From the NCBI RefSeq assembly GCF_023055435.1, contig NW_025963879.1, forward strand, positions 868,001-932,000: 64,000 bases of DNA. The letters run 5' to 3'. Made by a program: the position numbers and the translations under genes. The notes below the pieces were generated by a model, which saw only the letters and a program-made list of their open reading frames with translations, searched no databases and was not told the DNA's origin. Positions 30,743-57,400 of the stretch are shown here, piece by piece. This stretch comes from Haliotis rufescens. Taxonomy: Eukaryota. Numbering within the stretch: position 1 is the stretch's first letter; each line of letters starts with the position of its first letter.

Positions 30743-33700
30743 TTCGTCTATTCCCCACATGAGTATAATGCGTTAAGTTGTTTAAATTTGATCAGGGTTA
30801 CAGAATTCAATTCCTTAGTATGGCGTTCAAAAAGTTTTATTGTAGATCATTTCCAATCGTGACCATCAATGACCAAAATGATGTTAGATGCAATTCTTTT
30901 TGTGATTTGTGTTTGTTTAGGTAAATACTTCCCTGGCATTTGCATATTTTTGTGACGAGTGTCACCGATGAGGGACACCACCACTTTTTGCAAGTGGACC
31001 ACAGACATGTGCTTATGTTTGGTCAGTATTATACAATATATATTAATTTTCTTATGATCATGGAAAGAGTTGTGTCACTTATATTTACAGGAACGACTGC
31101 TTCATTACCGAAGATGCACCGTGGCTCGTCAAACAAAAGACGTGGGTTTGAAACCCATCGTGATAATGCTGGAACACTACTTTTTCAAGCATTATCTAAG
31201 CTCTGTATTTGGCCGGCTGATGAAGCTGAATCTCATTACTTACAGAAACTACTGCTTCGGTACTGAGGATGGACCGTGACTTGAGAGACACGAAATCGTC
31301 TTGCTCTGTTCCGACTCGAAGACCCAACTCCTATAGTCAACCGTCTTGGGTTTACCACAACATTTCGTCTTCTGAAATACACAGAAACATGACATTCGTT
31401 GATGTTTGTACTCGTTGAATGATGTTTTAAATAATATTTTAACATGGAGTAAGGCGTTCTCACACCACCGCGAAACTGACGTGCAGAGGAGTATGAACGA
31501 CATCTTTTAGCGTTGATACGATTTTCACGAGACTGTGTTCCAGATGTGGCGTAAACACTGCGGATTAATTCTTGAGGTAACCGCTGGGGATGAGTAAACA
31601 CAAAACTATAACATTTGTCTATTATCATTGGTGAGGTGAGGTGACATGGGGTTTTACGTCGCGTCCCAGATTATTGCACTTATATAGCGGCGTGAATGTA
31701 CGTGTGTGTGTGGCTGCTTGTACTAGTCCGCCCTGATGCCGATTTATAGTGCTAACTCACTGAGATACCATGCCGCAGTTTAACATGAATACCCTACTCA
31801 GACACAGTATATTGAATCCGAGCCGACCAGTCCTTGTTTTAGCCCCTTAATGCCGAGCGCCAGGCAGGGTAACAACATGTAACATTTTTTGACGTCTTTT
31901 GGTATGACGTGGCCGGTGTTCGAATCCCGGACCTTTCGCTCTCCTGGCGGACGCTCTACCACTAGACCACAGAGGCGGTCATTATCACTTAGACACATCG
32001 TACATTTAGACCCTCATTCCATACAGGTTTGGACTTGAACACACATAAAGTTAATGTAAATTCTAAAACACATTTCAATATTACGTTTATCGCACTTTTA
32101 TCTTCAACTTAGAACAGCACAACTGCGTGTTGCAACAATATGCATATCTGTAGCTTACTTCTTCATAAGACCTTGTCTTATAGCGTTTGCTCGTCACGTC
32201 AACAGGCCTGGGTTCAAATCCCCAAATGAATATATTGTCAGAACTCTTCCGCCGTTATATTGCTGGAATATTGCTGATGCGGCGTAAAACCTCACTCACT
32301 AACCATACACACAACGTACACGACACAGTGAGCAGCAGTGAGGACGTGTCTGTCGTCGATGATGCTGCCACCGCACAGGCTGCTTCTGGTTGCCACTACA
32401 GCCATCCAGGGAAACTGACACTCTGCAGACGCATCCCCTCCCACAATACGGCTAGATGCCACGTACATCTGGGCCGGGCCGGTTATGGAGCTCACACCAC
32501 AGTCTAGAAATGAATGTCCTTGTTAAGGAAGTATGTCATACAAAGATCTGAGTTAAGTATATGAAAAAACACAAATACGTACAAAGTTTTCATGGGGACA
32601 GGCCAAATAAATAAGTAATCAAAAGGTTTTTAGTGCTAACACACACACAAATGCTTCATGTTGTTTTTTTGTGCATACAATGGACATATAAAATAATAAC
32701 TGTACGACAAAAATTGTTTTATATGCATCAACATTAAAGTTTCCCGAAACCTCGCTGAACCAGGAAACCCCGAATTCAGTGCGTTACTGTTTGTAACGAC
32801 AACATAAGTACGAAGAATATTACTCTGAACCACTGATTCGTTAATCCGGAAATGTTTTAATCCTTACCATTTTACTGGGAAGAGGACCGTCCGGATAAAC
32901 GAGGTTTCAGTGTCCTGACTTTATCTTGAAAAATTTATCTACGCCTAGTACAAGTGAACATTTGCTAACGCTGATCCCCTTTTACATACAATTATGAGTA
33001 CCAGATGCATACGTGTTATGGTTTATTTGCAAAAATATTTAATTGTACAGGTATCTTTTATACTATGATAAATGCCATGTTACCTTTCACAGTTAACAAG
33101 GGAACGGTAGTCGTGGTTGTCCTTGGAGGAGGTCGTACTTATGTAATAGATCAAATGACTTATAAAATACAATGTCATTAAAGGAAGAGGAAGTCAATAC
33201 TTCAGCATGATGTCACGTCGTATTTCTTTTTTTTATCAAAACGTAAAGTAAAACACATGTCTTTAACTTCGTCTGGATCATATAAACTTGATAGCTCATT
33301 ATCATGCATCAGAAATCACAATAAACAGGTAGATGTAGCTAGTATACATGGCATAAGCAGTACAAGTTTACGTGATAGTTCTATTGTTTATGTAAATGTG
33401 AACGTGCATGAGGCTGTTTTACCGGAAGGTGGGCGCCCACATTGACAGTATCTGTAGAGTAGCTGGCACACCTGGGATGTGGGGTAACATTGGCGGAAGT
33501 ACGGACAGTGCTCTCCACATCTGCCTATGTCATGAAATACACATATCAGGGATGGAACTTCCCAATATAACGAATATTGCAAAGACGTCAGTGTATTTGT
33601 GTCAACGAATCAATAATATATCTCATACAAGGGGCCCTTAGCGCCACAGCTCATTTATGGAAAGCTCTAAACATTATGAATAATAATAAATCACTATACA

Positions 33701-34752
33701 ATTTGAACGAGCAGATCATTGCAGTGTTGTTAAAGGAAAAATTGATGGGATTGCAAATTTATCGAGCCTAAACCCCCTTTAAACAAAATTTTTATATTTT
33801 TTATGAAAATGTTTAGTATAGCGTGAATTAAGAACACTGACATCTAGAATATTGGGCGCAAAAGGAATTTTTTTTATTATGACATTTTATTATAGTGAAT
33901 CACAATGATGACACCAGGTGTTAGCGAAGAGGGTATGCATGTTCTGCTCTAGCCGAAACACCCGCCACTCACATAATCAAAAAGTTCCAGCAAATAAAGA
34001 GATGTGAAAACTCCATTACAGGTCACAAAATATGAGAAATCATTGCCCATCATGTTGACAAGCGGTGTGACCTTTCTAGTAAATTCCTCTGAATGTCCAC
34101 TATAAGATATCTGGAATGACCTAACCAGGCTAAACACTGTCATATTCAGTTCCAAAGAAGAAATGTTTTGAGCTCTATGTATAATTACTTGAGCCGTTTT
34201 AAGACTAAGCCAAAAATACTATATTTTTCTTATGTGAAGTGAGATTGCTGACACCTGTTTCTTCGGTATTCACCATCCGTATTATTATCAACTGAGTCAC
34301 ACTTTTGATTCATTGTCATATGTTTACCAGTACTTAACCATACGAATAAGTAATACGATTATACTTCTCAAAGAAGTTAAGGACCACCCGATATTTCAAC
34401 ATAACTACATGTACAGTTAATCTATTATACCATGTATACATGTATAGTATTATGAAATAATCGGATGATCCTTTCTTTTGAATAGCATACAATTACTGTG
34501 TCTTCATATTAATTCAAACATCAGTAACATGCATGTCACAAGGTAGTGTGTTACTATTCAAAGGTAAATAATTGTATAAATTTATCTGACACAATTAATC
34601 TTAAGTAAAATAGTCAATCCTGCCTGCACAACATTCGTCAACAACTTACGTGTTTGACCGTGGCTCCTACACACAAATGTCAACAAGCAGAGAGTAAACA
34701 CAAAAACTCGCCACCAGAGACTCCAGACGCGAATTCCCTCACACCAACCCAT
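29191..34752 (-). CDS. G4: secreted trypsin-type serine protease zymogen (~338 aa) with an N-terminal 6-Cys module
   Basis: 8 exons: 34752-34650 (signal peptide), 33524-33423 (CGEHCPYFRQCYPTSQVCQLLYRYCQC), 33137-33084 (RPPPRTTTT linker), 32503-32320 (SR|IVGG, TAAHC), 31371-31244, 30481-30344 (NDLAV), 30009-29858 (GIDSCR, Asp189), 29346-29191 (GDSGGP, SFGRGC, PGVY, stop). Triad and trypsin S1 pocket intact; 1017 nt, open frame. Confidence 0.93.
29560..29780 (+). mobile_element. SINE family B copy in the last intron of G4
   Basis: GGTTCGAATCCC B-box; GCATCACTTCGGGC...GTTAAACCAAACTCACTCACT. Confidence 0.75.
30688..30738. repeat. (TA)n microsatellite
   Basis: Direct reading. Confidence 0.95.
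31640..31980 (-). mobile_element. tRNA-derived SINE family C copy
   Basis: A-box TGGTCTAGTGG and B-box GGATTCGAACACC, then CCTGGCGCTCGGCATTAAGGG...ACTGGTCGGCTCGG. Shared with the 15268 and 6095 copies. Confidence 0.85.
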
Positions 34753-38391: not shown

Positions 38392-41300
38392 TTAGTAGTG
38401 ATAAGGCTTCCTCGCTGACGTTACATAGTCAATCCAAGCGATATATTTGGACACTCTTGTATATTTTCCAGGAAACATGGGCCGAGCACAACCAACACCA
38501 CTAGACACAACTCCAATCAGAGTCCATTTGTTGTTGTAGTCGCAAATCAGAGGACCGCCGGAATCAGTCTGAAAAAAAAAAGTATTTCTTAGTGAATCGG
38601 TTTGACAAAATTGCAATGTGGTAGTAATAGCAGTAGTAGCAGTAGTAGTAGCAATATGACCAGTAGTAGAACAACCACCAGCAGCAGCAGCAGCAGTAGT
38701 ACCAGTGGTAGAGACATTAGCAGTAGTAGTAACAGCAGAAGGAGTAGGCGTAGTAGTCGTAATAGTAGTAGTCGTAATAGTAGACGTCGTANNNNNNNNN
38801 NNNNNNNNNNNNNNNNNNNNNNNNNNNNNNNNNNNNNNNNNNNNNNNNNNNNNNNNNNNNNNNNNNNNNNNNNNNNNNNNNNNNNNNNNNNNNNNNNNNN
38901 NNNNNNNNNNNNNNNNNNNNNNNNNNNNNNNNNNNNNNNNNNNNNNNNNNNNNNNNNNNNNNNNNAAAGCTTATTCTATTTTATTAGTTAATACCCACAC
39001 ATCACCCTTCCGCTGTGCACAAATAAGACAGAATAAACAACACTGTTATCGCAATTATCTTTTATCATTTTCTTATTATTTTTGTCTGCAATGTAGTCTG
39101 ACAATAACCTCTCCTGACAGTGTGATGATATAGATGTCATGCATTTCTGCATCTGACAACATAAACAACGTACATTACAGGAATCTTTTCCTCCTTTGTC
39201 GAAGTAACCGGCGCAGAGTTGTGTGTCCACCATGTTGTACGCCGTCTGGCACGTCTCCCACTCCACCAGCGGTACTTTCACCTTCTGTAGCTGGAACGGC
39301 TGGAACAGCCTCGTCTCTGCAACATCAAGCCACATGTTATAACCGTTACTCTTAGCATTTAGAACACTTCTCGTGGTGGCAACACAAGGCAATAAACACA
39401 CGTATTGGAACATTCACAGCTTGATAGTTTGGAGTGTATAGTTTAAAGTTCCCAACATCAAGCTGACACGCCGCAATATGATCACTTAAACATTGTTCAA
39501 GTAAGTGCCTTTGTTACAAAAATAAGTTAATGCCTTAGGTTTGACAACAAAAAGGGATTGGGGTGCAAAATATTTTTTTAATTTATCCTTTAAGTGAAAA
39601 TGATTGTATGTCTTATGAACGATAAATGAAAACAAGCTGTCTGTAGTCAATTCCTAAGTGGGCAGTATGTTCTAAATGCCATTCAAAGACTTGATGTTTG
39701 TCGGTTGGATTTTTATACAGACCTTTATCCTTGACAAATCTTTCACAAATATTAACAAGGAATGAGTGTTCCGTGAACTTTGAATAACTTTGTACACGCT
39801 CTAAAGTATCTAAGCAATTTATAATTGTAGACGTCTTAAGTTGGATCTGTTAGTATACTGCTTTACATAAAGGGACAATTCTCGCTTGGAATGACACTCA
39901 CCTGATGTAAGTCCCCATCCAGCAACAATGCATTTCTGCATGGGTTTATACTGATGGTCTTGAGGTGGAAGGCAAATCGGACGTATGCATTTGCTAAACT
40001 TGATGGGTTCTTTTAGTCTTAAAAGTACAATATCGTTGACATCTGAAAAAAAACATATTGATTGTTCACATGAAGATTTTATATATTGGTTCAATAAAAA
40101 GGATATGCCTATATTTGTCATTAATACAGATTACGATATTTAACGTTCAAAGTTCAAAGAGACGGCTTCTTATTCTAACATAAAGTTATAGATGGATATT
40201 TGTTTTTATAATGAAGCCATGCTTGATGGTTGATAACTCACTGGTGACATTCAGAGGGCTTTTACAACACTAAGAATTGTGATTGGCTAAGTCTATTTTC
40301 AGAAGATATACTTTTACATATATACTTTATCCTATTCGACCTGGAACGGGAGGTATTCAGTAACAGGGACTAACAGTGAAAGTATTAGAGCAAAGTAGTC
40401 CCCAGCCACCGATATTTTTAAGAGAAAATTACGAAATTGAGCATGGCATGGAGGAAATGTGGCTCCTCACTTTGCAGCAAAATACCATGCGCTGGTCGTT
40501 TCTCTGTCAAGATTCAGTAATGTCCCTGCAGTGTTGACGTAAATGTAAAGCTTTTAGTCAACTCAACAAGTGGAATAAAATATTGATACATGTACATGGG
40601 AGAATATTTCTCACACACCTGACCAATGCTCTGGATGCATGCTGAAGGCTGATACTGTTGCATTTCGTGTTCGGCGTCTGTCTGAGGATCCGAGCCCCAC
40701 AGTTACATCTTTGGCATTCCTTATTCCCCTATGTGAAAATAAAACATGTATATGTTTTCTCTGTACACTATATAATTAATATCTATCATATATAATTCCA
40801 TTCTTGGATACCAACACTTGAATGTGATATGAAGTTGTGCGCGAAGCACATTCACATTTCTTCATAAATCATACCAACAAGTATCAGCGATTTGCTAAAT
40901 GGTTTGTACATTTCTGACACACTGTTACAATGTACATGTTTATAACTAAGATACTTTTACTCGTGGCGTTGAATCACATCACTCACCAAGCGTGTTACAG
41001 TCTGTTTAAATATCAAGCTGTCATATCAGATTATCTCATAGTCTAAATGGTATTTGTTGGTTCAAATATAACTGAAAATAGCATTCTTTAAATATTTGGC
41101 ATAAAAATGTGGACAGTGAGGTAGCCTGGTGGTTAAGGCATTGTTGGATCGATTACTCAAATGGGCACAGTTGTGACGCCCAGTTAAGGTATCCACTGAC
41201 GTCATACTTCTGCCCTGAAAGCATATTTAATCACTCATTCACCCACTCATTCGAGAAAATAAAAGCCAAGGAAGCTATACTAACATGAGGCAGTGAGCTG

Positions 41301-43572
41301 CACTGATGATGTGTCTGTCGTCGATGATGGCGCCTCCACAACGCAAGGAACCCTTGATGAACAGCGCGACGGTCCATGGCAACTCGCACTCGCCAACGTC
41401 CCGTCCGCCAACGATGTAGGTGGATATCCTAGGTATGGGAGGAGATTCAGCAACGCCACATTGGATGTCCGAGGGTATAGCTTGGAAAAGTTCAAACAGT
41501 TACTTCATTACACACTCCATATTTTCGAGACATCCTTAAATATACATATATCCGAAGTGTCGTAGTGAAACATATTTTTGCCATTTACCTCATTTATTAA
41601 TATTTTATAGTCATTGTTACTATTGCAAATGAAGTTAAACAAAAAAGATATGGGGCAAGAAATGATTCATGCGAACATGTCAATGTAGGCTTTGAACATG
41701 AAGCAGCTTTATTTATGAATACAACATGCTATGTGAAGCTACCTTGTATTTGCGTAATATGAAATTTAAAGCCTTAAATACCTTCACACTTGCATATGTC
41801 CCAGTACTGTTTGCAGGCGGGAAAGCTTACGCACTGCTTTAAAACATCACAGAAGCCACATAGGTCTGTAATATGACAGAACATTACAGTGACATGAAAC
41901 CACACAGTGCAAGACTTGAGTCATATCTATAACGTGCCAGTGATCATTCACTTTACATAAGTGTCTCACAAAAGCAATGTTGAGCAGTGAAAGCTTTTCT
42001 AATGTTGCCAAACAATACGACAGAATTCATAACATGATTTGCAATTTTTATAATCCATGCATATGTAATGGAGATATATATCTCAATGAACTGAACATAG
42101 TAACATTCCATGATTTACAATCGCATGCATCATGCATACAGGGGAATTTATACATGTATATATGATAATTTACATTTGGACGCATTGAAAACTATTTGTG
42201 GGGCGGTTCGGGGTACCAGTCATGTTAAATTTTATAACGAAACAAACTTTCAGTCCCTAAAAGAACGACGACACCACTTCAAACTGACTACATTTTACAA
42301 AATGAAAAACAGTATTTCACCTGTATATCTCAACGATCTCATTCCAAGTCCAGTCTCTGATAAAAGCAATTATAACCTTAGAAATAGATCTAACATGCAA
42401 AAAATTAAATGTAGAACCCAGACCTATGCTAAATCATTTCTTCCGGATACGATTAACCTGCGGAACACTCTACCCAATGAAGTTACTCATTCTTGCTCAT
42501 TAAAAGAATTCAAATCCTTAATTAATCGTTCTGATACAATTATTAATAATTTTGACTTAAAATACGGTTATAGATCATGCCAAATTGTCCACTGTCGCCT
42601 TAGGCTCGGCTGCAGTGACCTAAACGCTGATAAGTTTAGACGACATGTCAGACATATCAGATTGCTCTTGTAGGTATCACTTTGAAGACGCAATTCACTT
42701 TTTCTATACCTGTCAAAAATACGATAATATCAGAAACACTATATATTTCTACAAACATGGGTATGATTTAAAAACGATATTACATGGCAGTAGTTTAGTT
42801 AACAGTTCTGCAAACATGACTATCCTTAAATCAGTCCCCGATTTCATTGTCAAAAGCAAAAGATTCGAATAGCCTCATTTTATGCATGTAATGGATAACT
42901 GCATTATCTTATTTCACAGACACCACTTGTAGTGGCTTCATATATTTCATTTGTGCATTTAGTATGTTTATGTTTAGCACTATCTTACATATAATCTTAT
43001 ATATAACCAGCTGTTGTAAAGTTATTACCTGGAGAGGTATTTACATAAGCAAGTTTTGCTTGTTTACCGATCCATATTTCTTTTGAAATAAAAATATGTT
43101 TAAACCATATGATACCTATATATATATATAGTGTACATTTCTTTCTTCATTGTAATCAAATATTAACAACATATGCCATCACCACTAAATTGTTTCTTAC
43201 ATATTAATTCAAACGACATACCGTGCTTGTTTACATACACTGTATATTGATTATCTTTTAAAGTGTATATAGTCGATGCCACACAAAGATTTATATCAAA
43301 TAATACCCTTCATATGGCAATAAATCAGAAATAAACAATACATGATACCTAGCCTTGAGATGATGACAAAATATTGTGATAATACATTGAAACATGAAAC
43401 AAAGCTTTTTTTACAAGGCAGCTATACTTTGCCATTCCAAAAAAATAACCATTGTAGCGCGAGCATATATATTATTAATAATTCAAAAAATGGGCAAACA
43501 CTTACTGGCGCTGTCGGTTGTCAGGAATAAGGCACATAGTACAAGTAGTAAAAGTGTAGATTTCGTCCACAT
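38392..43572 (-). CDS. G5: secreted trypsin-fold serine protease (~305 aa) with an N-terminal 6-Cys module; Tyr activation site, TDSGG
   Basis: 7 exons: 43572-43506 ([22 protein letters not shown]), 41865-41782 ([27 protein letters not shown]), 41480-41285 (STY|IVGG, SAAHC), 40728-40619, 40042-39902 (NDIVLL), 39316-39174 (GKDSCN), 38568-38392 (TDSGGP, SSGVGC, PGKY, stop). 918 nt, open frame. Confidence 0.92.
38621..38791. repeat. (AGT/AGC)n trinucleotide tract abutting an assembly gap
   Basis: Direct reading. Confidence 0.9.
42168..43106 (+). mobile_element. 5'-truncated non-LTR retrotransposon (CR1/L2-type ORF2 C-terminus) in G5 intron 1
   Basis: Frames read ...SLKERR...FYKM...YNLRN...[11 protein letters not shown]...[10 protein letters not shown]...CSC...[10 protein letters not shown] (zinc-knuckle), then a 3' UTR with AATAAA. 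8-bp TSD ATATGATA at 42160-67 and 43107-14. Confidence 0.85.
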
Positions 43573-44687: not shown

Positions 44688-47342
44688 GCAACATATATTC
44701 GTGTGGCCAATACAAAATTAAACTAAACAAAATAGAGCAACATATTCCTAAACTTAATATACCGATCCGAAGTTTTATTGAGAAGGGTACTGCATGACAG
44801 CAACGTTAACAAGAAAAACAATAACATTGAGGTGTGTTATTTACTTTGCCAATTATGGAAACAGTGTGTATCCACTTTGCTCCCTTTTCATCATCTTCAT
44901 TTGATTGTGAGTGTTTTTATCAATTTAATTTCTGAAATGATTAGGTGTAATTCAATATGGCATTCAAAGGTATGAGACGTACATAAACACATAAAGTTGT
45001 TACTAGTATCTCTATTACGTATTTGGAATCAATATATAATACAATTATGAAAGCATATTTTGAAGGTAAGGAGCTTTTATATCATATGTATCGTTCAGGT
45101 CCATTTTAAAGCAAAATGTAAAATGGGAACATATAAGATTTAGAGAAATGAAGCCATTTTAAAAGTGTATAAATGTGTATTAATTTTTATGATTTATTAC
45201 TCTTTCTTATATTCCTGATTACCATAATCAATCTCATGTAAATCTACCAACATAGCATTGTCCCATATTGTCCCAAAACATATTTTTTTTAATGTCAATT
45301 AACAATGATGTAATGATATGCATAACATTAACTCTCATTTCATTTATCNNNNNNNNNNNNNNNNNNNNNNNNNNNNNNNNNNNNNNNNNNNNNNNNNNNN
45401 NNNNNNNNNNNNNNNNNNNNNNNNNNNNNNNNNNNNNNNNNNNNNNNNNNNNNNNNNNNNNNNNNNNNNNNNNNNNNNNNNNNNNACTTTGTGCAATTAA
45501 TTGTATCAATAGGCCTAAAGTTCATGCATAAATCTAATCAATAATCAATCTCTTATATCTTTTTGTGTCAGCAACAAAGAATAACATGAATGTTTCTCAT
45601 TAAAGATGAAAGGTACATGATAGCATTATGCAGTGTGTGTTCTGGTGATAATTGCTGCAACTTCAGATCTAGAGGGGTTAAACAGGTGCCTATAATCCAT
45701 CAGAGCGGGGTTTGTTGAATACATTTATACATCTCAGCATGAACCATCTATGATGACTATGTACTCTTGATAAGCCCTATTCATTACACTAACTCTGCAC
45801 TCTCAATCCTGTAAGTTGGGCTGAATGGTCTATTAGAAAGAAGAAAAGAAACGAATGCTAATCACTATTGGATAAACATGTTTTTCCTGCACAAAAAATA
45901 CCAATTTAATGCCAGTGAAATGACTTTTATCGTTGTCTTTTAAAGGAACAACTTACCATTTGTATTTGACCATTAGTATTTGATATATATTCGCATGTAG
46001 TTGGCTACAACAATGCAAGAGGATCTATGTACATCTTTGTCAATAGAAAAGTCATCACTATCCAATTTAGATAATTTGAAGCTTGTTTTCAAATTAACAC
46101 AAAGGCCACTCTTGAAACGAGGACAGTTGAACTTGTCAGTGCACTGGGTTCATCGTTACTTAAAAGCATTTGCATAAGACCCTTGTAAATGTTAGAACCC
46201 GTGCAATGCACTGCATACAAGTGTTATCTATTAGATCTACATCCAACTTGTCCGATAGTAAGTTTATCAAAAATGCCAAGTTCCTTGCCTCCTCCAATGT
46301 ATATGACAAGATCTGCAATAAAATCTGAAGGACTAATTATAAGGTATGTTGTTATGGGATGAATTGCAATTGTAAAGCACAAGGGGAGTGTGGGGGTTGG
46401 GGGAATGAAGGATTGAAAATGCCTTATTAATCCATATTGATCTTTATTCTCCAAAGAAAACCAGAATTGTTATCAATGTTTCGAGTCTCATCAGGCCATA
46501 ATTAACGTTTATGAAGTTGTAACGTACAGTTATGTGACGTCATATCATTTAGGAGAATTATGGCGTCACAATACCAAGGTAACAATGAACAAATAACTGA
46601 CCCCCTTTACATTGTACTTAGGCGAGTATTTATGAATGAAATGTTGGTCTTTTTGAAAAAAATGTAGGTACATTATACAAATTAAGCTTATATAGCGGGA
46701 AGCCTAAAACACTGCCGCTTCCACATTTATCGAAATGTTCACTGAGTGGAATAGAGGGGGTGTGGCCTCTTCATTTGTGAACGGTGAAGATTCTTTCTTC
46801 TTTTTAATTTAAGTTCTGTCTTTCCTATATACTTTTCATTGCACGCACTAGAAAAACAATCAAGTAAACAACATTTCTAGTATCACAAGTCATTTTGTTT
46901 TTCAGTAATTCAGTAACCTTTGTAATTTGGACNNNNNNNNNNNNNNNNNNNNNNNNNNNNNNNNNNNNNNNNNNNNNNNNNNNNNNNNNNNNNNNNNNNN
47001 NNNNNNNNNNNNNNNNNNNNNNNNNNNNNNNNNNNNNNNNNNNNNNNNNNNNNNNNNNNNNNNNNNNNNNNNNNNNTAAATTGTTTTTAATATGAAATGT
47101 TTCATCTCATGATCATGATAATCGTCGCCACCAAAGGATATTTAGATTTCAAAATATAGTCTAAGCAAAAAACCAAGACTGAAACATTACTTTATGTTTA
47201 TTTCTAGCTACCGAGTTATACGCACATGTGTGTACATGAACTCTCAAAAAATAAAATTAAACAAAATGGAAATCAAATTGCCATGAAACGGTACATGTTC
47301 ATTTTGTCACGCATTTATTTTAACATTGATAGGTGCAAACAT

Positions 47343-50300
47343 TCAAGAGAGCTGTTCATGTTCTTTAACACTGTTGATCCAGGTGGCATAGTGAGGAATG
47401 TCTATGTACACAGAAACAGCTTCTTCGCAACTCCTGTGTGATGTGCTGACAGCGTACAGAAACCACTTATATTCTCGTTGAAGCATCATTGGGGCTCCTG
47501 AATTTCCCTGAAAATTGTGAGATCATTTATAGTGCAAGTTGTAAGTTGTATTTTAAATTTAAGGATGTCTATCAACTGAATATTCAATTCAATTCAATTC
47601 CGCATTGTAAAGTAAATTAATAGTGTAAGTTGTAAGTTCTGTTTTATAGATAATGATATTATTAAGTAAACTGATAATTTATTCAATAAGTATTACCCAA
47701 ATTATAAATTTAGTACATGTGAACATGACATTTATGAATGAGTAAGATGGGTTTAACGCCGCTCAGAACAGTATTCCAGTTATATCACAGATTAATGTGG
47801 GAAGAAAGTCCGAAGTGATGCAGGTTTCAGACATTTACCAGTTAGGCGAAACCAACAAACTCGGATATATATTGTGCTGACAAAACAAAAAACATAATCA
47901 AGGCGAACCGGGATTCGAATCTACAATTATAAGTTTCCGGCGTACCGAAGGGATTCAACTCTGCACAGCGAATTGCAGCGCCTAAGACTGTGCCTCACGA
48001 TTAATCATGGAATATAATTATATTCCTTACATGACAAACTGACGAAGAAGATATGCTAGACCACAATCCAGCGCAGATCGAATGCTGTAGTGCCGAAACT
48101 TCCGGGTAGATGTTCACACACTCCTCACGGCTTATTACTGGTAGCACAGTTGCCTGCAATCTTGCCCTTTGTTTGTTCCAGAAACCTTAAAACATCAAAG
48201 GAAACTGGCATATTAAAAGTTGTAAGACAACACAAAAGGACATCACATTGACATCTACATTATACCTTTTTTTGTCACCAATGAAACTATATGACAAGTC
48301 ACACTACATACAAATAGTACACAAATTGCCGGGCAAAAGAAGGTAAACACTTGAAAATTGAACTCGACCCAAAACTGAGAAATGCTATGAAAATGTTAAT
48401 AGGCTAGAAAACAGAAACCGAGACACTGTAAACTTCAGGTGCAAAACTCAAACGTGATGCCCGTATCAAATACATCCCAATCGCATAACCATTTGTTGTT
48501 TGTCTCATTTCTAGCCCCCATCAAACATCGGTGTGTGTGCTTTCTTTTGCCCGACAGTTTAGAATTGAAAAATAGACAAAATGGTTTGATATAGGGAAGA
48601 AATAAAACGCCCTTACGCCCAAATCCTACGATTGTGACCAGTTCTCCCTTTTCAGGATTGGTTGCTGTTCCGGGTATACATATTGGCTGAATACAGGGCG
48701 TAAACCAAACCTTCTTCTTCAAGGTGAGAACTGCGACATCGTGTCCTGAAAATAATACAGGCACAACATCAACCCTTTTAGTAATGAGAATTGAATTGAT
48801 TTTCTTTATATCCCATATGTTTTCAGCAGAGATTTGATTGATTATGGAAATGGTTTTGTAAGAACTTACTTGCCAAACCAGTGTTTCTGTATTTAGGATG
48901 AAGCGTAAAGGACTCCAAGTCTATGTAGGTGAGCTGTCCAGCCTTTTGTGAACCCATACCCACATGCACATCGTCAGCGAGAAAATACCTTGTAAAGATA
49001 ATATGGAATGTAGTGTATGTCGTTGTTATTTCTTTGACGTAAATTGGCTGTTGGGTTTCCCATGATGTTTAATTTGTTTATTGTATTAGAACTCTTGAGA
49101 ACTCTTCACGAGTTTAGAAATTGCAAGTACATGTTCCTATATTCGATGAAATATGTCTGTCTCACAATATTAGGACCATCTTGTGAACAGCGTCATTCAA
49201 TCGTGAAGCGTCAAGCAAATGCTACAAAAACAAATGGCGTCATGATGTTAACTTCAGAGGGGTTAAACAGGTGTCTTTCAACCATTAGAGGGGGGGCTTG
49301 TTGAAAACATTTATGCAGCTCAGCAGTCAACATGTATTGGTTATAACACGAAGGTTACTTGACAATCAGATTTTTCGCTTTTTTCTGTTTTCATATGCAG
49401 GCAACTCGATCTGTCCATTCTGACTTTTGTCAGATTTAGTGAATTTGTTAGAGATAGTGATGTGTGTGATAACTTGTTATTTTCGAGTAAGAACATTTTC
49501 CTTATATGAATACAATGCATAAACATGTGGATGAGCCATGTGGTTCGTAAAACTCATCTGCCTTCACCATAACAAATGACCAAATATTAGTATACCATCA
49601 GCCAGCGTGGAACATGTAATGATCTCACCCCGCCAACATTATTGTTCTAAATCATTTTGACAACAAGACAAACGTAGTATCCTTTAAGAAGGTTCATCAT
49701 ATATAAATTCATGAATCGGACAACTTTATTTACAAATCTAGATATGCTTGTGCATGATAATAGACATATGTCTGGGTATTGGGACACAACCAACTCGTAT
49801 CCTAAACATAGCTTAAACAAATGTTAAATGGCGACTATGCTCTAAAGTAAGTGCACATGTTCTGCCCAGAAACTATTATCTGAAGGACGAGAATCAAATT
49901 TGCTAGGACTGCCAATTAACCAACCCCCGTCCACCTTTAAGAATATTATTTCATTTTCTTACCTTTGACTGAAGCAATGGGCAGCAGTGATGATATGCCT
50001 CTCGTCTATTAAGGTTCCAACACACATTTCAGCCTTCCTTTTCTTATCACGAACAATAACTACCCATGGGTGTGGGCACTTTCTGTTCAGCACTGTACCG
50101 CATGAAGATACTGGAATAAATGTATGCTTTAATATATTATGTGATCCAATGCAATGCATGATGTAAATGAAATGGACAAGGACGTACCTATTCTGTTGTT
50201 GTTACATGTGGTCTAAGAAATGCTAAAACAAACAAAAGTATTTTTCATACAAACCAAATACGTGTTCATTCAAAAGCATTTATAAAAAAAGTATAATATT

Positions 50301-51202
50301 TTTTTTTTATAATACATGTTTTGCACTGTTAAATAACAACATGACCTGAAAATCAGATATAAACTAATCGCCTTTATTTTTTTGCAAATATGGATATTAT
50401 CTGTCATATGTAGGGCTGATATGCATGAACTTACGCATCTTATCACAGTTTTTTGCAAATATGGATATTATCTTTCATATGTTGGGCTGATATGCATGAA
50501 CTTACGCATCTTATCACAGTCAAGTAGGTCATAGAGTTGCTGGGAATCCGCATCATGAAGGAGATTGGTCAGAATCTTGCATAACTCTTCACGAAATAAA
50601 AACTAAATAAACAGATCGTTCATTGTTGAGGTAAACATGATTTCTTTAGCAAATTAGCAAATACTTATTTCCTTACAAATCTTTATATATTCATAAATAG
50701 CATTACGTCCATTACTGCTAGTGTCGTTAATTGGTTAAGATTGATAATTCCACTAAACAGTACAGCCAAAGAAAGAAGCAGATGAGTTGTTCAAGCCTTA
50801 CTTAATTAGCAATTCTATAGGACCGACGCAACGTTTTGATTAAAGATCGATAAAAGTACTAGTTTTTAAAGACGATCACATGAACATGAAATGAAACACA
50901 TTTGAAAATGCTTTGCTATCTAGCAAGTAGAACTTATACATTGTTCAACGTACAGCACAAAAATCATATCATTTGAAAGCAGAAAAAATATACTTATGTT
51001 GATTTTGAACAACAAAAGGCAAACGATTTCACGGTGAAAATTATATAAACCTGAGAGCATATTTTATACTGTAGCTCTATTACATGCCATTACATATCAA
51101 AAGAAAATTAATGCATTATAACATCCACCTACCTCCAACTCCTTGTGCAAGAAAACAATGGCATATGCAGAACAATAGGCTGATGACAAGAAGGATACGC
51201 AT
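47343..51202 (-). CDS. G6: atypical secreted trypsin-fold protein (~288 aa); triad retained, IVGG and Asp194 lost
   Basis: Exons: 51202-51133 (MRILLVISLLFCICHCFLAQGVG), probable 50586-50506 (ELCKILTNLLHDADSQQLYDLLDCDKM), 50110-49963 (CGTVLNRKCPHPW...TAAHC), 48988-48870, 48745-48617 (HDVAV), 48185-48031 (SSSVCH), 47507-47343 (GNSGAP, stop). 867 nt, open frame. Confidence 0.88.
47735..47995 (-). mobile_element. SINE family B copy in the last intron of G6
   Basis: GGGTTTAACGCCGC...CCGAAGTGATGCAGG...GGCGAACCGGGATTCGAA...GCGCCTAAGAC. Confidence 0.8.
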
Positions 51203-53120: not shown

Positions 53121-54307
53121 GGTTATCTCTAAAACTTGCCATTGTCAATGGCATACACCTAAATGTTAAACAGTTGTTTTATCCCTGAGAATATATTGCA
53201 GCAAGATTCAGTGCTTCACCTCCTAACCTTTGCTCCCACCTAACAGATACAAGCAAAATATGTAATCATATTAGTCCTTGCTCGGGTCAGATACCTGCCT
53301 TCCCTTAAATACGCCTGTTGTGTATATCATTACATGGATATGTTTCTTTAGCAGTGATTGCTTATGAATATGGAAATGGGCTTGTCACTTTGATATAAGA
53401 CATGCATGTATCCATGTTCAGGTAGTTGTTCAAGCACACAAGAGGTAGTGTGAGACCCTTGAATTATCCTTGGGTCGATTATTTGTATTTGGCACACAAA
53501 CTGTACATGTATGTCTCGACATTATGCTTCGTTTTGGTGTGTGAATGTTCACATATCATAGAACATCATCCAATTGGATGGTAATCTTCAACCTCATCAA
53601 CAGGTGGGTTTCTTTGAAATCGAATCCTTTCTTCTGTCCAATTCTGTCTTGAAGTGTTAATAATATATTTATGGACGTTTCCAAATACCTCTCACTCTAA
53701 TATACGGTCATGCGATTTCACATATGTATTCATCGTTTCAAATGTGTTGATAAACATGATCAGACAAATTAATCATACAATGAAAGAAATGTTTTGATGA
53801 AACTTTGTCAACGCCTCAAACAAGACCTTGCGGTAATCTAGTTGTTAGAACACTCTCCTTCCTCCTAGCAACATGTTAAACTTTGCAATACATGTAAGAA
53901 TATCCCATCAAAACCCCAAAACAATAATAATCTATAATTATAATTTGTTCTCATTTTCAGTGAGGAATCTTACGCCGCTTTCAGCCATCGTCCAGCAAGA
54001 TTAAGGTATTGGATAAAATATTGCCATTCATAAATTGTACCTAGGAGTCAGACTGGATCTTTTGTCCAGCGGTCTAACATTTATTTAAAGCATGTTCTAC
54101 AGAACACCTTTTAATGCAGTCGATGATTCTGGTGACTGTTTCTTTGTTTACCTTCTTTATGCTACTGTTCATTTTGTAACACACTTTTAACGAATTCTAA
54201 GAAATCTTTTGTGGAAACATTTGACTATTAAACCTCATGATATCAACCAAACTTCAAGTAACGACAGAATATTTGAAGACACTCCCTGTTCACCAATCAC
54301 CCAAGCA

Positions 54308-54314
54308 TATAAAT
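54308..54314 (+). promoter_or_regulatory. Possible TATA box of G7
   Basis: TATAAAT ~135 nt upstream of the proposed ATG at 54446. Confidence 0.35.
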
Positions 54315-54445
54315 ACAACTACATCGAGCAAATTTTTATTAAATGTATCCAACAGAGAATGCATATTGACTGACGGCAAACCTTAACTACCCGCAACAAG
54401 GAATTTTAATTGTGGATTATCGCCAGTGTCGCTGCATTTAGAAAC

Positions 54446-57400
54446 ATGATTTGTTGGAAGGTATTTTCAAGGCTTGTGTTGTCTCTCGTAAGTCCTACCT
54501 AAACATGGCTTATGCAAAACTGCATATGTGCATGGGTTTATTGCTATGGAATTTGCCGTCGTTACCCAACGATTGAATAAAGCTTATAAATTACTAAAAA
54601 TCTGTATACACACTACTGTCATATCATTATTCTTTGTAGTTTGCTTCAAACATTCATTAGTTTCAAGATTTAATTGCCTACTTGTTACTTGAGTACATTC
54701 TTCAAAGCTTTCAGCTTGACAGATCTCTGCTGACGCTCTCCTGTTAATTGCTTTAGGTAAGAACCCGGATTTGAGTGGGTATCAATGAGTCAGTAAACAT
54801 GCGATAGTTTTAGTTTGAGGGTTAGTTTCCTGTGGTGAGATTTTAAGCAGGAAAGGACCTTTGTTCTGTGGTTTGAGTCAGATTTTCTAGCAGGAAAAAG
54901 CCTTTGTTATGAAGGTTCTGTCATATACAATTCAGAAGAGATAAATATGATCTGATAGTGTAAACTACGGGAACAAAATGACAATGATTTGGAATATAAG
55001 AAGAGGTCTGATTTTCCGTGTAACTGTTTTTAGCTTCTTGTGCTGGTGTGGAGGTAAGCCTAAATGTGTTTTGTATTTATAATGAACACAACATGCTTTC
55101 ATTTTGAGAGAAAAAATCTTTATGTTGAGAATGTTGTAAACATGTTGCTGGGTAGAAATATTTAACCAACATGATGTCATTATGTTCTCCCGACAATTGA
55201 GTCTCATTGTTCACTTTTAATTTGACGTTCAAGTAGCCAACATGTACATGCAGATGTCAATGCATTATTTCGTCCTGTCGAGCCCCACGTTAGATCGTGT
55301 GAAGCATAGACCTGAGGACACCAGCAGTAATATTGCCGTGTTATAGCGGGTTTAAACATTATTAATTATTATTTCATCATATGATATTTAATCATTTATA
55401 TTTCAGCTGCGCAAAGAAGAGCACGTTTCTGTGAGTCTTTATTGAATTGTTTCGACTCTTCTCTTCTCTGCCCGGTGCTGTTTGGATACTACAACTGTAC
55501 TGATTTTAACATTGCGCGAAATACAGGTAACGTATTTATGCATTGAAGCTACACTATTGACATCCGTTAGTTTCCCTTAGTATATGGTGGCTGACGAATT
55601 ATAAGAGAGTGTTTTTAAATTGTCAATAGTAAGGATACCCGCATTAATTCCATGGCCCATTTGAGGCTAGGGGTCAGAATTTCCATTCATTTAGTGACTT
55701 ATTTATATCATGATTTACCCCCCAAAAGCATTTTCTTGTATTAATATCTTAATTCCAAACACGATATCATGTCACACATCTAATGTGCTTACGTTTATTA
55801 AATAGTTGACATGAAATTATGTTTTGCAAATTCAGTTCATATAATTATCATTAAACGGTTTACTCAAACCTGTGTTCTCAGTTTGATAATATGTCTAGGA
55901 AATTAAATTTAATCGTATTCACATTTACCTTACTGAAGTTTTACAGTATGCTATTTTTTTATAAATACTTATTATTATGATTACCTTTAACAAAGGTATA
56001 ACTTTACATACATATCTGTTAAAAAAGTATAAGTTGGACATGTAAAATGGGAACTTCACTTTAAAATAGTAGCATTGTACTGAAACAATATATCAGTTTT
56101 GAATTATTGTAGTATTCGTCAGCAAATATATTTAAATTGTTTTAAGTCATTTGACTGGTTTTACTTAGAGCCGGCGTGTGGGGAGAGCCGCGTGACGGGA
56201 AGGGCGTCTCTGTACGCTATGCCGCGCGTCGTCAACGGTGTAGACGCGGAGGAGAGAGAGTTCCCATGGACTGTTAACGTGGAAGATGAGGAATCTTTGA
56301 TCGGCATGTGTGGTGGCTCCATCATCAGAAAAGATGTCATCCTCACGGCTGCCCATTGTGTCAGGTATCTGACACTTGTATTTCTGACCAGTGCACATAT
56401 ATATATGTTCTTTTATTAGTTATTAAACTTGAAAGTATTGACTGTAGTGAGTGAGGTTGATTTAAGTAAATTAAAAGTGTATATTTTATTTTAAAGATAA
56501 TGATATCATTAAGTCAACAGAAAACATGCTTTATAAATATTATCCAAATAATGAATCAAGTACATGTGAACATGACATTTATGAATGAGTGAGTTGGGTT
56601 TAACGTCGCTTTGAACAGTATTCCAGTTATCACGGCGGGTCAGCTTAATGTGGAAAGACAGTCCGAAGTGATGCAGGTCTTTGACGTTAACCATTTTGGT
56701 GAAAACTACCACCATGGGTATCGTGCTGACAGACCTAGAAACATAATCGGGGCGAACCGGGATTCAATCGTAGGTTTCTGTTGTGTCCAAGGGACGTAAC
56801 TCTGAACAGCGAATTGCGGCGCCTTAGACGACTGTGCTACCAGTGTCCCGCATTAACTGCAAGATATGTGTTATCAATATATGACAACTAGTTGACATTT
56901 AGCGTTAGATCCACATGTAGTTTCCATAAATATATATGCAATTAAATGGGTTTGAAAAAGTATATACGCTACTGCTCACCTCTGGATTTCCTACATAACT
57001 GAGGGTGAGAAACACAATTCAGAATACTGGTATAAATGATATTCGTGGGCTCGAATTCCAGATCCATGATTGGCTACTCCATGGTCATGGCGGACTTCTG
57101 TCCTGGTTATAATTCATTGATACGTGTCCCATGTATCATGCCTCTGGCACACCATTTATCTTCGAACTTCTGTGAACATTGAGGCCCATACGGCATGTTA
57201 TCACTAATTGATTGTGATTTACGTAAGTTCATAATATTGTCGGAATTGTACATGCTTTTTGCAGAGATGGCTTATGATTATCCAAAGGGTTTTGTCGCTT
57301 TTATCCATGTAAGTGACTGCAACATGCATAATATCGATACCATACATATTAATTCGTATATATTAGTTCATTTGTATAGTGTACATGTAATGTTAATATA

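What the first reader, a model, noticed from the sequence alone, without database searches (positions are those of the whole stretch)
33423..55526. Unrecognised ~27-aa Cys module on G4-G7 whose pairwise Cys losses predict its disulfide map
Seen: four single phase-1/1 exons align almost without gaps. G4 (33423-33524) CGEHCPYFRQCYPTSQVCQLLYRYCQC; G5 (41782-41865) [25 protein letters not shown]; G6 (50506-50586) ELCKILTNLLH-DADSQQLYDLLDC; G7 (55407-55526) RARFCESLLNCFDSSLLCPVLFGYYNC. The full pattern is C-x2/3-C-x5-C-x5/6-C-x6-C-x-C. G7 lacks exactly C1 and C5; G6 keeps only C2 and C6 at the G5 spacing. Inference: disulfides C1-C5, C2-C6, C3-C4, probably an amphipathic helical hairpin. The spacing does not fit clip, beta-defensin, CS-alpha-beta defensin, ShK, EGF or LDLa as I know them, so it may be a new protease-associated mini-domain.
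Basis: partly seen in the sequence, partly recalled or inferred. Interest (0 to 1): 0.78.

Follow-up and report, generated by a model that had tools for sequence, protein, structure and literature searches.

The report
Abalone protease helical Cys mini-domain
A cluster of red-abalone trypsin-like protease genes each carries one small exon encoding a roughly 27-residue cysteine-stapled module that no domain library recognises; it is real and transcribed, but so far it looks confined to abalones and its role is untested.

Summary
All four peptides sit at the stated places as AG/GT-bounded, phase 1/1 exons. The three assembly gaps lie in a G5 intron and between G5 and G6, and touch no coding exon I could identify.

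The window is Haliotis rufescens. The genome holds eight copies, all on one contig, each sitting between the signal exon and the protease part of a trypsin-like gene:
- Four copies have six Cys.
- Three have four Cys (C2, C3, C4, C6).
- G6 has two Cys.

Annotated proteins of four Haliotis species carry the module. Spliced transcript contigs include the G6 and G7 exons.

Pfam, PDB sequences, Foldseek and a scan of 1.84 billion proteins find no known relative. AlphaFold2 predicts a helical hairpin, with pLDDT 84 for the module alone and about 60 in the full-length protein.

The six-Cys and four-Cys forms are linked by exon position and Cys spacing, not by significant sequence similarity.

Verdict: a new, abalone-restricted variant of the small tethered pro-domains of S1 proteases. 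Interest is moderate.

The parts
33423..33524 (-). G4 module exon (six Cys, phase 1/1)
   Evidence: Present in the annotated H. rufescens protein P0349.
33084..33137 (-). G4 Pro/Thr-rich linker exon (54 nt, phase 1/1) between the module exon and the protease part
   Evidence: Located with one peptide of P0349. AG and GT flanks read directly.
34650..34752 (-). G4 signal-peptide exon, coding part (ATG at 34752, phase-1 donor)
   Evidence: Same residues as in P0349. The signal-peptide call is made by eye from the hydrophobic stretch.
32319..32503 (-). G4 exon with the linker Cys (D-CGVSS...), activation site SSR|IVGG and catalytic His. The 3' end is approximate.
29194..29346 (-). G4 last exon (GDSGGP, catalytic Ser) up to the stop codon
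41782..41865 (-). G5 module exon (six Cys, with C-x2-C at the start)
   Evidence: Present in P0349. H. rubra and H. cracherodii orthologues carry it.
43506..43572 (-). G5 signal-peptide exon, coding part
41284..41480 (-). G5 exon with linker Cys, activation site STY|IVGG and catalytic His
38395..38568 (-). G5 last exon (TDSGGP)
50506..50586 (-). G6 module exon (only C2 and C6 kept)
   Evidence: Exact exon ends are confirmed by joints 50110>50506 and 50586>51133 in 4 of 4 runs.
51133..51202 (-). G6 signal-peptide exon, coding part (transcript contigs run on to about 51234)
49960..50110 (-). G6 exon with linker Cys and catalytic His but no IVGG activation site
47346..47522 (-). G6 last exon, with GNSGAP in place of GDSGGP
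55407..55526 (+). G7 module exon (four Cys: C2, C3, C4, C6)
   Evidence: Present in annotated protein P0006. Joined to the signal exon in spliced contigs of 3 of 4 runs.
54978..55053 (+). G7 signal-peptide exon, coding part
56169..56374 (+). G7 exon with linker Cys (E-PACGES), activation site MPR|VVNG and catalytic His. The 3' end is approximate.
38792..38965 (.). Assembly gap inside G5's last intron. It is not part of the module.
45349..45485 (.). Assembly gap between G5 and G6
46933..47076 (.). Assembly gap between G5 and G6, 270 bases beyond G6's last exon

Best explanation
The stretch is a self-contained, disulfide-stapled mini-domain of about 27 residues, so far seen only in abalones.

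**Anatomy**
- One symmetric phase 1/1 exon encodes it. It forms the N-terminal pro-segment of a tandem family of secreted chymotrypsin-fold (S1) protease zymogens.
- The layout is: signal peptide, module, an extra Pro/Thr linker exon in G4, then an exon that begins with a conserved Cys-Gly.
- The activation site follows (R|IVGG-type; Y|IVGG in G5; absent in G6), and then the catalytic domain.

**Shown**
- The exons and their splicing.
- Conservation of the Cys pattern across four Haliotis species.
- An even Cys count, which leaves the module's Cys to pair among themselves.
- A predicted two-helix hairpin.

**Inferred**
- After activation cleavage the module stays attached as a small light chain. 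The link would be a disulfide between the linker Cys and the Cys of the (P/S)-[IV]-C-L-P motif of the catalytic domain, as in chymotrypsinogen and clip proteases.
- Tethered in this way, it would act as a docking or regulatory surface for zymogen activation or substrate or partner choice. That is the job clip domains do in arthropod cascades.
- The ancestral form had three disulfides. The G7-G9 lineage lost one (C1 and C5, replaced by Arg/Gln and Tyr), and G6 lost two.
- The most likely map is C1-C5, C2-C6, C3-C4, at about even odds against the alternatives.
For: **Exons and gene layout**
- The module exons are read directly.
- Each lies next to a phase-matching acceptor of the Cys-Gly/His exon and downstream of a hydrophobic ATG exon with a phase-1 donor.
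- Annotated proteins confirm these joins: P0002 = G9, P0006 = G7, P0007 = G8 and P0349 = G5+G4.
- Spliced contigs confirm them for G6 and G7.

**Copy number and distribution**
- The genome has eight copies, all on contig C101 between 714,944 and 979,378, and none elsewhere at E < 0.6.
- Module-bearing proteins come from H. rufescens, H. cracherodii, H. rubra and H. asinina.

**Conservation**
- Orthologue identity in the module is 19/26, 19/26, 23/26 and 21/26. In the protease part it is 205/238, 178/237, 65/80 and 181/239. Every Cys is kept.

**Cys parity**
- P0002 has 4 module Cys, 1 linker Cys and 9 protease Cys.
- P0134 has 6 module Cys, 1 linker Cys and 11 protease Cys.
- The module's Cys can therefore pair internally.

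**Catalytic machinery**
- His, Asp and Ser motifs, and an Asp six residues before the Ser, are present in G4, G5 and G7-G10.

**Structure prediction**
- The module alone gives pLDDT 84.4 with helices at 6-12 and 17-25.
- In full-length P0134 the region is helical at 31-40, 42-46 and 48-57.

**No known relative**
- all come back empty or non-significant.

**Linker Cys and PICLP Cys**
- The pairing of these two Cys in clip proteases is described in passages of PMC1761132.
Against: - No function, tissue or binding partner is known. The runs laid are coded, come from a single study, and are contigs only.
- In the full-length model the module has pLDDT of only 58-62.
- The alignment behind the module-only model has just 8 rows, all paralogues.
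- Foldseek and VIA-align give only generic helical hairpins, with best Z 3.2.
- The six-Cys and four-Cys forms do not find each other by HMM.
- Annotated isoforms X2 of the G5 orthologue in H. rubra and H. cracherodii skip exactly the 28-codon module exon. The protease can therefore be modelled without the module.
- The tether disulfide and the disulfide map are inferences. The tools returned no model coordinates, so no Cys-Cys distance could be measured.
- G5's C-x2-C and G10's 11-residue C4-C5 loop show that the frame is not rigid.
Confidence: 0.6

Rival explanations
1. The module is a miniaturised, diverged clip domain, or a relative of the defensin/clip-like modules carried by neighbouring protease genes. 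It would then have clip-type disulfides C1-C5, C2-C4 and C3-C6.
For: - It occupies the same slot: N-terminal to a linker Cys, an activation site and a PICLP-type Cys (passages of PMC1761132).
- It has six Cys, and C2-x5-C3 is exactly five residues, as that paper reports for bee clip domains.
- hhalign's only local match is this G-x-C-x5-C segment.
- The loss of C1 and C5 in G7-G9 fits a C1-C5 bond.
- A paralogue 13 kb upstream of the window carries a C-x6-C-x3-C-x14-C-x6-CC pattern at the equivalent place.
Against: - C5 and C6 are not adjacent, whereas adjacency was the criterion used in PMC1761132.
- C1 to C6 spans 25 residues in G4, against 30-70 in clip domains.
- Pfam CLIP gives no hit even at E <= 10.
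- hhalign probability is 2.0% and 1.2%.
- AlphaFold2 shows no strand.
- G6 keeps C2 and C6, which would belong to different bonds in a clip map.
Confidence: 0.12
2. The module has a cystine-stabilised helix/strand (CS-alpha/beta-like) fold. In it, C-x3-C in a helix bonds to C-x-C in a strand, which would directly give C1-C5 and C2-C6.
For: - G4, G10 and G11 have C-x3-C ... C-x-C. The pairing rule itself is recalled, not from a call.
- That rule predicts the same two bonds that the Cys-loss pattern implies.
Against: - AlphaFold2 predicts two helices and no strand.
- G5 and its H. rubra and H. cracherodii orthologues have C-x2-C.
- Foldseek gives no toxin or defensin match, with 0 matches at E <= 10.
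Confidence: 0.08
3. The six-Cys exons (G4, G5, G10, G11) and the four-Cys exons (G7-G9) are not homologous modules. They would be two unrelated short Cys-rich pro-segments that happen to sit in the same intron-phase slot, in which case the 'pairwise Cys loss' has no meaning.
For: - In the leave-out HMM tests neither form finds the other: E 6.6-34 one way, and E 0.75 or worse the other way, in 4,817 peptides.
- Pairwise identity is only 24-31% over about 30 residues.
Against: - The genes are clear paralogues in one tandem cluster with the same exon order and phases.
- The exact frame C-x5-C-x6-C-x8-C is shared by G4 and G7-G9 and by none of the other 4,813 peptides.
- The combined profile scores both forms.
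Confidence: 0.1
4. The segment is merely an elongated activation peptide with no role of its own, and its Cys are drifting.
For: - Cys number decays from 6 to 4 to 2 among paralogues.
- Annotated isoforms skip the exon.
- The full-length model gives it low confidence.
Against: - All Cys are conserved between orthologues of species as far apart as H. rufescens and H. asinina.
- The module evolves about as slowly as the enzyme.
- The Cys count stays even in every copy.
- The exon is retained in an expressed, otherwise diverged gene, G6.
Confidence: 0.1

Closest known systems
Clip-domain serine proteases of arthropods (Pfam PF12032 CLIP + PF00089)
   Same: - A small six-Cys module lies N-terminal to a linker Cys, an activation site and an S1 domain with a PICLP-type Cys, so the module should stay tethered after cleavage.
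- C2-x5-C3 spacing is the same.
- The genes occur in tandem families that include non-canonical members such as G6.
   Different: - The last two Cys are C-x-C, not adjacent CC.
- The module is about half the usual length.
- There is no Pfam hit and no profile-profile similarity.
- The predicted fold is all-helical, whereas the clip fold is mixed alpha/beta (recalled, not from a call).
- It is found in molluscs only, and so far only in Haliotis.
Chymotrypsinogen-type tethered propeptide (Cys1-Cys122 bond; recalled)
   Same: - A conserved Cys just upstream of the activation site, and a Cys in the ...CLP motif after the catalytic Asp.
- The gene layout, with the Cys-Gly at the start of the His exon.
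   Different: Here a folded, internally disulfide-bonded module of about 27 residues precedes the tether Cys. Chymotrypsinogen has only a short peptide there.
Disulfide-stapled helical hairpins: plant alpha-hairpinins, scorpion CS-alpha/alpha toxins, Aplysia attractin. Folds and disulfide patterns are recalled. PMC3484142 passages say only that attractin is a 58-residue peptide with three intrachain disulfides.
   Same: A predicted helix-turn-helix of about 30 residues, held by two or three disulfides. Attractin is also a six-Cys peptide from a mollusc.
   Different: - Those are free secreted peptides, not protease pro-domains.
- Their Cys motifs (C-x3-C twice) and nested pairing differ from C-x3-C ... 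C-x-C.
- No sequence or fold-search hit to any of them came up.
Other small Cys-rich pro-domains of gastropod S1 proteases, seen here and in earlier notes of this scan
   Same: They occupy the same slot in related genes:
- Littorina P0163: C-x3-C-x13-C-x5-C-x13-C-x3-C plus a Thr stalk.
- Patella P0042 and P0023: C-x8-C-x11/12-C-x12-CC.
- Babylonia and Littorina clip-like heads.
- Neighbouring abalone clusters with defensin-like or Tyr/Cys heads (unchecked notes).
   Different: - There is no significant similarity. BLASTP of G10 against P0042 gives E 0.027 in a single comparison, and hhalign gives 11.6%.
- The module HMM scores none of them.
- Their spacings and lengths differ.

Membership tests
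S1 (chymotrypsin-fold) serine protease, Pfam PF00089 (the host genes) | Match to the Trypsin profile over the family cut-off | tested here: met
   The own-genome scan gives exon-wise matches on C101 inside and beside the window. Annotated products P0002, P0006, P0007 and P0134 carry PF00089. The full-length model matches enteropeptidase, prostasin and plasmin catalytic domains at E of about 1e-25 over 234-264 columns.
S1 (chymotrypsin-fold) serine protease, Pfam PF00089 (the host genes) | Catalytic His, Asp and Ser motifs, and an IVGG-type activation site | tested here: met
   G4, G5, G7, G8, G9 and G10 have TAAHC/SAAHC, D[IVL]A/V and DSGGP (DSGGA in G10), plus R|IVGG-type sites (Y|IVGG in G5). 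G6 is the exception: it has no IVGG, and GNSGAP replaces GDSGGP.
Clip domain (PF12032) | Six Cys with Cys5 and Cys6 adjacent (criterion quoted in PMC1761132) | tested here: not met
   All four six-Cys copies end in C-x-C. The criterion is read in passages of PMC1761132.
Clip domain (PF12032) | 30-70 residues between Cys1 and Cys6 | tested here: not met
   There are 25 residues between Cys1 and Cys6 in G4, 23 in G5 and 30 in G10 and G11. The range is from PMC1761132 passages.
Clip domain (PF12032) | Sequence match to the family profile | tested here: not met
   PF12032 gives no hit at E <= 10 for 7 module peptides. hhalign against 40 regex-picked arthropod clip regions gives probability 2.0% and 1.2%.
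Clip domain (PF12032) | Linker Cys plus PICLP Cys for tethering to the catalytic domain | tested here: met
   A Cys-Gly opens the His exon in all eight genes examined. RPICLP, RPVCLP, RSICLP or RPACLP follows the catalytic Asp. The bond itself was not tested.
Clip domain (PF12032) | Mixed alpha/beta fold with disulfides C1-C5, C2-C4, C3-C6 (recalled) | tested here: inconclusive
   AlphaFold2 shows helices only, but on a shallow alignment. The disulfides could not be read because no coordinates were returned.
Cystine-stabilised alpha/beta (CS-alpha/beta) peptides | C-x3-C in a helix paired with C-x-C in a strand (recalled) | tested here: inconclusive
   The motif is present in G4, G10 and G11, but G5 has C-x2-C. 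No strand is predicted. Foldseek gives 0 matches.
Alpha-hairpinin / CS-alpha/alpha helical hairpins | Two C-x3-C motifs on antiparallel helices with nested bonds (recalled) | tested here: not met
   The second motif is C-x-C, not C-x3-C. Only the predicted helix-turn-helix shape agrees. VIA-align shows generic hairpins with Z <= 3.2.

The most novel reading that the evidence does not exclude
The module is a lineage-born, single-exon, disulfide-stapled helical hairpin that arose within abalones (or vetigastropods) and took over the clip-domain role of a tethered docking module in a local trypsin-like protease cascade. Its paralogues form a natural deletion series of 3, 2 and 1 disulfides. One lost bond is replaced by an Arg/Gln-Tyr contact. 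The exon itself may be an optional cassette that switches the protease between a module-bearing and a bare form.
Probability: 0.3. Interest if true: 0.55.

Novelty: new variant of a known kind. Interest (0 to 1): 0.4.

Why it matters
- Small disulfide-rich pro-domains decide who activates whom in invertebrate protease cascades. Almost all that is known comes from arthropod clip domains.
- A structurally different helical module in the same slot, in a mollusc of aquaculture and conservation interest, would show that this architecture was invented more than once.
- It would also give a handle on abalone extracellular proteolysis, whether in immunity, digestion or reproduction. Which of these applies is unknown.
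- The 6, 4 and 2-Cys paralogue series is a ready-made test set for how a mini-domain tolerates loss of disulfides, and for the rule that Cys are lost in bonded pairs.
- In practice, public annotation does not mark the module. It also fuses G5 and G4 into one 646-residue 'TMPRSS9-like' model.

Tried and rejected
**Ideas and leads that went nowhere**
1. CS-alpha/beta idea. I first read C-x3-C ... C-x-C as a cystine-stabilised helix/strand motif. It is demoted because AlphaFold2 gives two helices and G5 has C-x2-C.
2. Clip homology. There is no Pfam hit and hhalign gives 1-2%.
3. Patella and Argonauta pro-domains.
   - By eye, G10's YCSSA...C-x-C resembles Patella P0042 and P0023 and Argonauta P0233.
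   - BLASTP gives E 0.027 and 13 and hhalign gives 11.6%.
   - After looking at 17 sequences this is not significant, so I keep it only as a lead.
4. ESM Atlas look-up of the P0134 module gave no usable hit.
5. PDB sequence search gave one chance row at E 0.61.
6. P0001, the top row of the 1.84-billion-protein scan, is a 2,254-residue repeat protein. Its score is a sum of more than 20 stretches of at most 4 bits each, so it is not a relative.
8. Alignment A5, which had module exons as rows beside full-length proteins, was mis-split by MAFFT. I replaced it with A6.
9. Rfam and tRNA scans of the very deep stretch at 52400-53200 gave nothing.
10. Paper searches found no description of this module.
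    - 408 papers hold at least 3 of 4 terms, and 15 were listed.
    - 2 papers.
    - 37 papers, 10 listed.
    - 347 papers, 12 listed.
    - I read only search listings, plus passages of PMC3484142 and PMC1761132. Most subscription-journal papers are not in the library.
11. Supplementary files were not asked for.

**Not done**
- I made no spliced, joined model of G4, G5, G6 or G10. Exons were searched and compared one by one, and the joined step was left out.
- Full-length work used database proteins only.

Full report
**What is at the stated places.**
G4, G5 and G6 lie on the minus strand and G7 on the plus strand.
- Reading the flanks, each exon is preceded by AG and followed by GT on its coding strand. 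Each begins with two bases and ends with one base of a split codon, so all four are symmetric phase 1/1 exons.
- The Cys spacings are as described.

**Assembly gaps (tested first, as asked).**
- One search places the N runs at 38792-38965, 45349-45485 and 46933-47076, with two more far upstream.
- With the H. rubra orthologue P0134 as a ruler, G5's exons at 39174-39332 and 38395-38568 carry adjoining residues 205-257 and 258-315. The first gap therefore sits in an intron.
- G5 starts at 43572 and G6 ends at 47346-47522, so the other two gaps are intergenic.
- No exon that I use touches a gap. The continuity of the DNA across the gaps stays unknown, and I did not fill them.

**The genes.**
- The window is C101:868001-932000 of a 1.33-Gb genome. 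Source names of identical annotated proteins on a contig of the same length (25,740,563) say Haliotis rufescens.
- Downstream of each module exon lie trypsin-family exons.
- In all eight genes examined, the His exon has a phase-matching acceptor directly before a conserved Cys-Gly. An activation site follows:
  - SSR|IVGG in G4
  - STY|IVGG in G5
  - MPR|VVNG in G7
  - GLR|LVGG in G8
  - MPR|IVGG in G9
  - LPR|VVGG in G10
  - none in G6
- Upstream of each module exon there is an ATG exon with a hydrophobic stretch and a phase-1 donor.
The joins are confirmed by database proteins and by transcripts:
  - P0002 is G9, P0006 is G7 and P0007 is G8.
  - P0349, a 646-residue H. rufescens record named 'transmembrane protease serine 9-like', is G5 followed by G4 read through as one product. 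It contains both six-Cys modules.
  - That record also shows a 54-nt Pro/Thr linker exon in G4. I located it at 33084-33137, again phase 1/1.

**How many copies, and where.**
- A profile of the four exons found only those four exons plus one weak place.
- By eye, upstream of neighbouring His exons, I found three more: G8, G9 and G10.
- A seven-row profile then gave eight places at E <= 7.7e-6. Seven were the query rows themselves. The eighth, G11 at C101:714944-715054, is a near-copy of G10.
- The next best match had E 0.64. In all, 20 rows were listed at E <= 10, from 144 candidates scored.
- All eight lie on C101 within 265 kb. G4, G5, G10 and G11 have six Cys; G7, G8 and G9 have C2, C3, C4 and C6; G6 has C2 and C6.
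- A ninth piece, an inverted relic of the G8 module, lies in a G8 intron.

**Other species.**
- The profile of seven copies (G6 left out, G11 included) was scored against 1,835,955,588 representative proteins. Three reached E <= 0.001: P0002, P0003 (H. rubra), and the repeat protein P0001, whose score is a sum of many stretches of at most 4 bits.
- Word-indexed searches with P0002, with an alignment that carried G4, G5, G6 and G10 exon translations as separate rows, and with P0134 added P0004, P0005 and P0122 (H. asinina) and P0134 (H. rubra, the G5 orthologue with six Cys).
- Cluster look-up added H. cracherodii orthologues of G5, G7, G8 and G9. Of these I read only the G5 sequences P0348 and P0350.
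- Among the 347 proteins fetched up to that point, the module HMM scores eight Haliotis proteins at 31-54 bits. Nothing else real scores; the next best has E 1.5.
- I read the pro-regions of 17 proteins by eye: P0134 plus 16 non-Haliotis molluscan relatives. The latter carry other Cys-rich heads or none.
- The word-indexed tool only sees proteins of 0.55-1.75 times the query length. That is why the fused P0349 was missed until.

**Transcription.**
- The run search returned four contig sets of one study, holding 11% of the words of window 47300-57299. That share fits exons only.
- Laid on 49600-55599, they give single contigs covering 49960-50110, 50506-50586 and 51133-51234.
- The joints 50110>50506 and 50586>51133 have ends CT..AC, which is GT..AG on the minus strand. 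Both occur in 4 of 4 runs; in run X3 they sit on two separate contigs.
- Contigs covering 54826-55051 and 55405-55526 are joined by a GT..AG joint in 3 of 4 runs. The fourth run has both pieces unjoined.
No exon-skipping joint was listed.
- The runs are labelled RNA only by a guess. The intron-less contigs are what argues for RNA. Contigs say nothing about level or tissue.
- A synonymous T>C at 55442 is seen in 4 of 4 runs.

**Is it a known domain?**
- Pfam gives nothing for three of the four window peptides. For G7 it gives only PF10645 at 16.3 bits, against a cut-off of 25. It gives nothing for G8, G9 and G10 or for a neighbouring clip-like peptide.
- PDB sequences give one chance row at E 0.61. 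The ESM Atlas gives nothing usable.
- A profile-profile comparison was made with 40 arthropod clip regions. I picked them by a Cys regex from the fetched proteins and dropped 2 of 42 as not clip-like. It gives 2.0% and 1.2% probability, aligned only over G-x-C-x5-C.
- Passages of PMC1761132 give the working definition of clip domains: six Cys, Cys5 and Cys6 adjacent, 30-70 residues from Cys1 to Cys6, five residues from Cys2 to Cys3, and a linker Cys bonded to the PICLP Cys. The abalone module meets the last two points and fails the second and third.

**Fold.**
- AlphaFold2 on the eight-row module alignment, with G4 first (33 residues), gives mean pLDDT 84.4 and helices at 6-12 and 17-25. That is C2 to C3, a four-residue turn, then a helix carrying C4 and ending just before C5.
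- A full-length model of P0134 on 56 rows has a confident protease domain. The region 31-57 is again helical (31-40, 42-46, 48-57), but at pLDDT of only 58-62.
- Foldseek finds no PDB match for the module.
- VIA-align over 48,161 chains gives 61 chains at Z >= 2, best 3.2, all ordinary helical hairpins.
- The full-length model matches enteropeptidase, prostasin, plasmin and factor XIa catalytic domains over 234-264 columns only.

**Disulfides.**
- Cys counts are even once the signal peptide is set aside. They leave the module's four or six Cys to pair among themselves.
- If whole disulfides are lost, G7-G9 say C1-C5. G6 says C2-C6, which leaves C3-C4. Of the 15 possible maps only this one fits both patterns (my enumeration).
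- Two further points favour it:
  - In the seven four-Cys sequences I read, the C1 position is Arg (5) or Gln (2) and the C5 position is Tyr (7 of 7). That looks like a replacement contact.
  - G6 shares two extra protease-domain Cys with G4, G5 and gene A that G7-G10 lack. Its loss of C1 and C5 is therefore probably independent of the loss in G7-G9.
- Against it:
  - Given the G7-G9 pattern, 7 of 15 possible surviving pairs in G6 would have been 'consistent', so the agreement is weak as a test.
  - In an antiparallel hairpin the N-terminal and C-terminal segments run in opposite directions. That favours nested bonds (C1-C6, C2-C5, C3-C4), with re-pairing of C2 to C6 after the loss. This is inference, because no coordinates were returned.

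**Are the two forms one family?**
- HMMs built from one form do not find the other significantly, and pairwise identities are 24-31%.
- What ties them together is that the genes are tandem paralogues with identical exon order and phases. In addition, the frame C-x5-C-x6-C-x8-C is shared by G4, G7, G8 and G9 and by no other of 4,817 peptides in 144 kb.
- I accept homology at about 0.85-0.9.

**Constraint.** Between orthologues the module is 73-88% identical and the protease part 75-86%, and no Cys changes. G6 is the odd one. It is 29-37% identical to the others over 115-119 aligned core positions, has no IVGG, and has GNSGAP in place of GDSGGP. It is nevertheless spliced and transcribed.

**Likely working.**
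- Shown: a secreted-type S1 zymogen family whose only pro-segment is this module.
- Inferred from the chymotrypsinogen and clip precedent: the Cys-Gly Cys bonds to the ...CLP Cys, so the module remains on the active enzyme as a light chain and offers a docking or regulatory surface.
- Most members have Arg at the cleavage site and an Asp six residues before the catalytic Ser. Members could therefore activate one another; this is a hypothesis.
- Annotated isoforms X2 of the G5 orthologue in two species skip exactly the 28 codons of the module exon. The symmetric exon allows this without a frame shift. I could not check whether it happens in vivo.

**Context from earlier notes (unchecked).** The same contig carries further clusters of protease-like genes with other small disulfide heads, including three on this window at 313-27035. 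I did not test those claims. They fit a picture of one large S1 supercluster in which phase-1 head exons have diversified.

**Verdict.** The feature is real, expressed, conserved and unannotated. It is a new variant within a known kind (tethered disulfide-rich pro-domains of S1 proteases), seen so far in four Haliotis species. Its disulfide map and function remain open.

Noticed in passing
window 29194-43572: The public H. rufescens protein P0349 (XP_048255066.1, 646 aa, 'transmembrane protease serine 9-like') reads G5 and G4 through as a single product. G5's C-terminus ...KPYHY is followed by YKV and then G4's start MGWCEG.... This looks like a fusion artefact of annotation.
   Followed up: partly
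window 47346-51234: G6 is spliced and transcribed, yet it lacks the IVGG activation site, has GNSGAP in place of GDSGGP, and is only 29-37% identical to its neighbours. It may be a non-activatable protease-like protein.
   Followed up: partly
window 41284-41480: G5 and its H. rubra and H. cracherodii orthologues have Tyr, not Arg, before IVGG (STY|IVGG). Its activator should therefore be chymotrypsin-like, not trypsin-like.
   Followed up: no
proteins P0350 and P0351 (orthologues of window 41782-41865): Annotated isoforms X2 of the G5 orthologue in H. cracherodii and H. rubra are exactly 28 residues shorter and skip the module exon. The exon may be a cassette exon.
   Followed up: no
L001:9062-9352 (C101:941062-941352), minus strand: An inverted relic copy of the G8 module (…LCHVQKCSEISHLCFLLLHWC…) lies in a G8 intron beside the Asp exon. 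It scores E 1.8e-4 with the four-Cys HMM.
   Followed up: partly
window 52600-52999: Thousands of short transcript contigs pile up here, with summed depth of 1e5 to 3.7e5 and many irregular joints. There is no Rfam or tRNA match. Similar ORF text recurs elsewhere in the window, so it is probably a dispersed repeat.
   Followed up: partly
L007:4171-4494 (C101:852171-852494), minus strand: The paralogue just upstream of the window ('gene A') carries C-x6-C-x3-C-x14-C-x6-CC followed by a run of Thr, in place of the 27-residue module. The pattern is clip- or defensin-like, and Pfam gives no hit.
   Followed up: partly
L005:7268-7378 and L009:4944-5054: G10 and G11 are near-identical module exons with near-identical flanking intron sequence. 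They lie in opposite orientation 264 kb apart, which suggests a recent inverted duplication bracketing the cluster.
   Followed up: no
proteins P0163, P0042, P0023, P0204, P0211, P0217, P0233: Other gastropod and cephalopod trypsin-like proteins have their own unannotated Cys-rich heads. Examples are Littorina's C-x3-C-x13-C-x5-C-x13-C-x3-C plus a Thr stalk, and Patella's C-x8-C-x11/12-C-x12-CC. Pfam marks only the protease domain in them.
   Followed up: partly
window 55442: A T>C difference from the assembly appears in 4 of 4 runs. It is synonymous (Leu) and lies inside the G7 module exon.
   Followed up: no
window 5744-5899 and 21127-21276, minus strand: Further trypsin-like exon fragments with altered motifs (for example DNGG in place of DSGG).
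   Followed up: no
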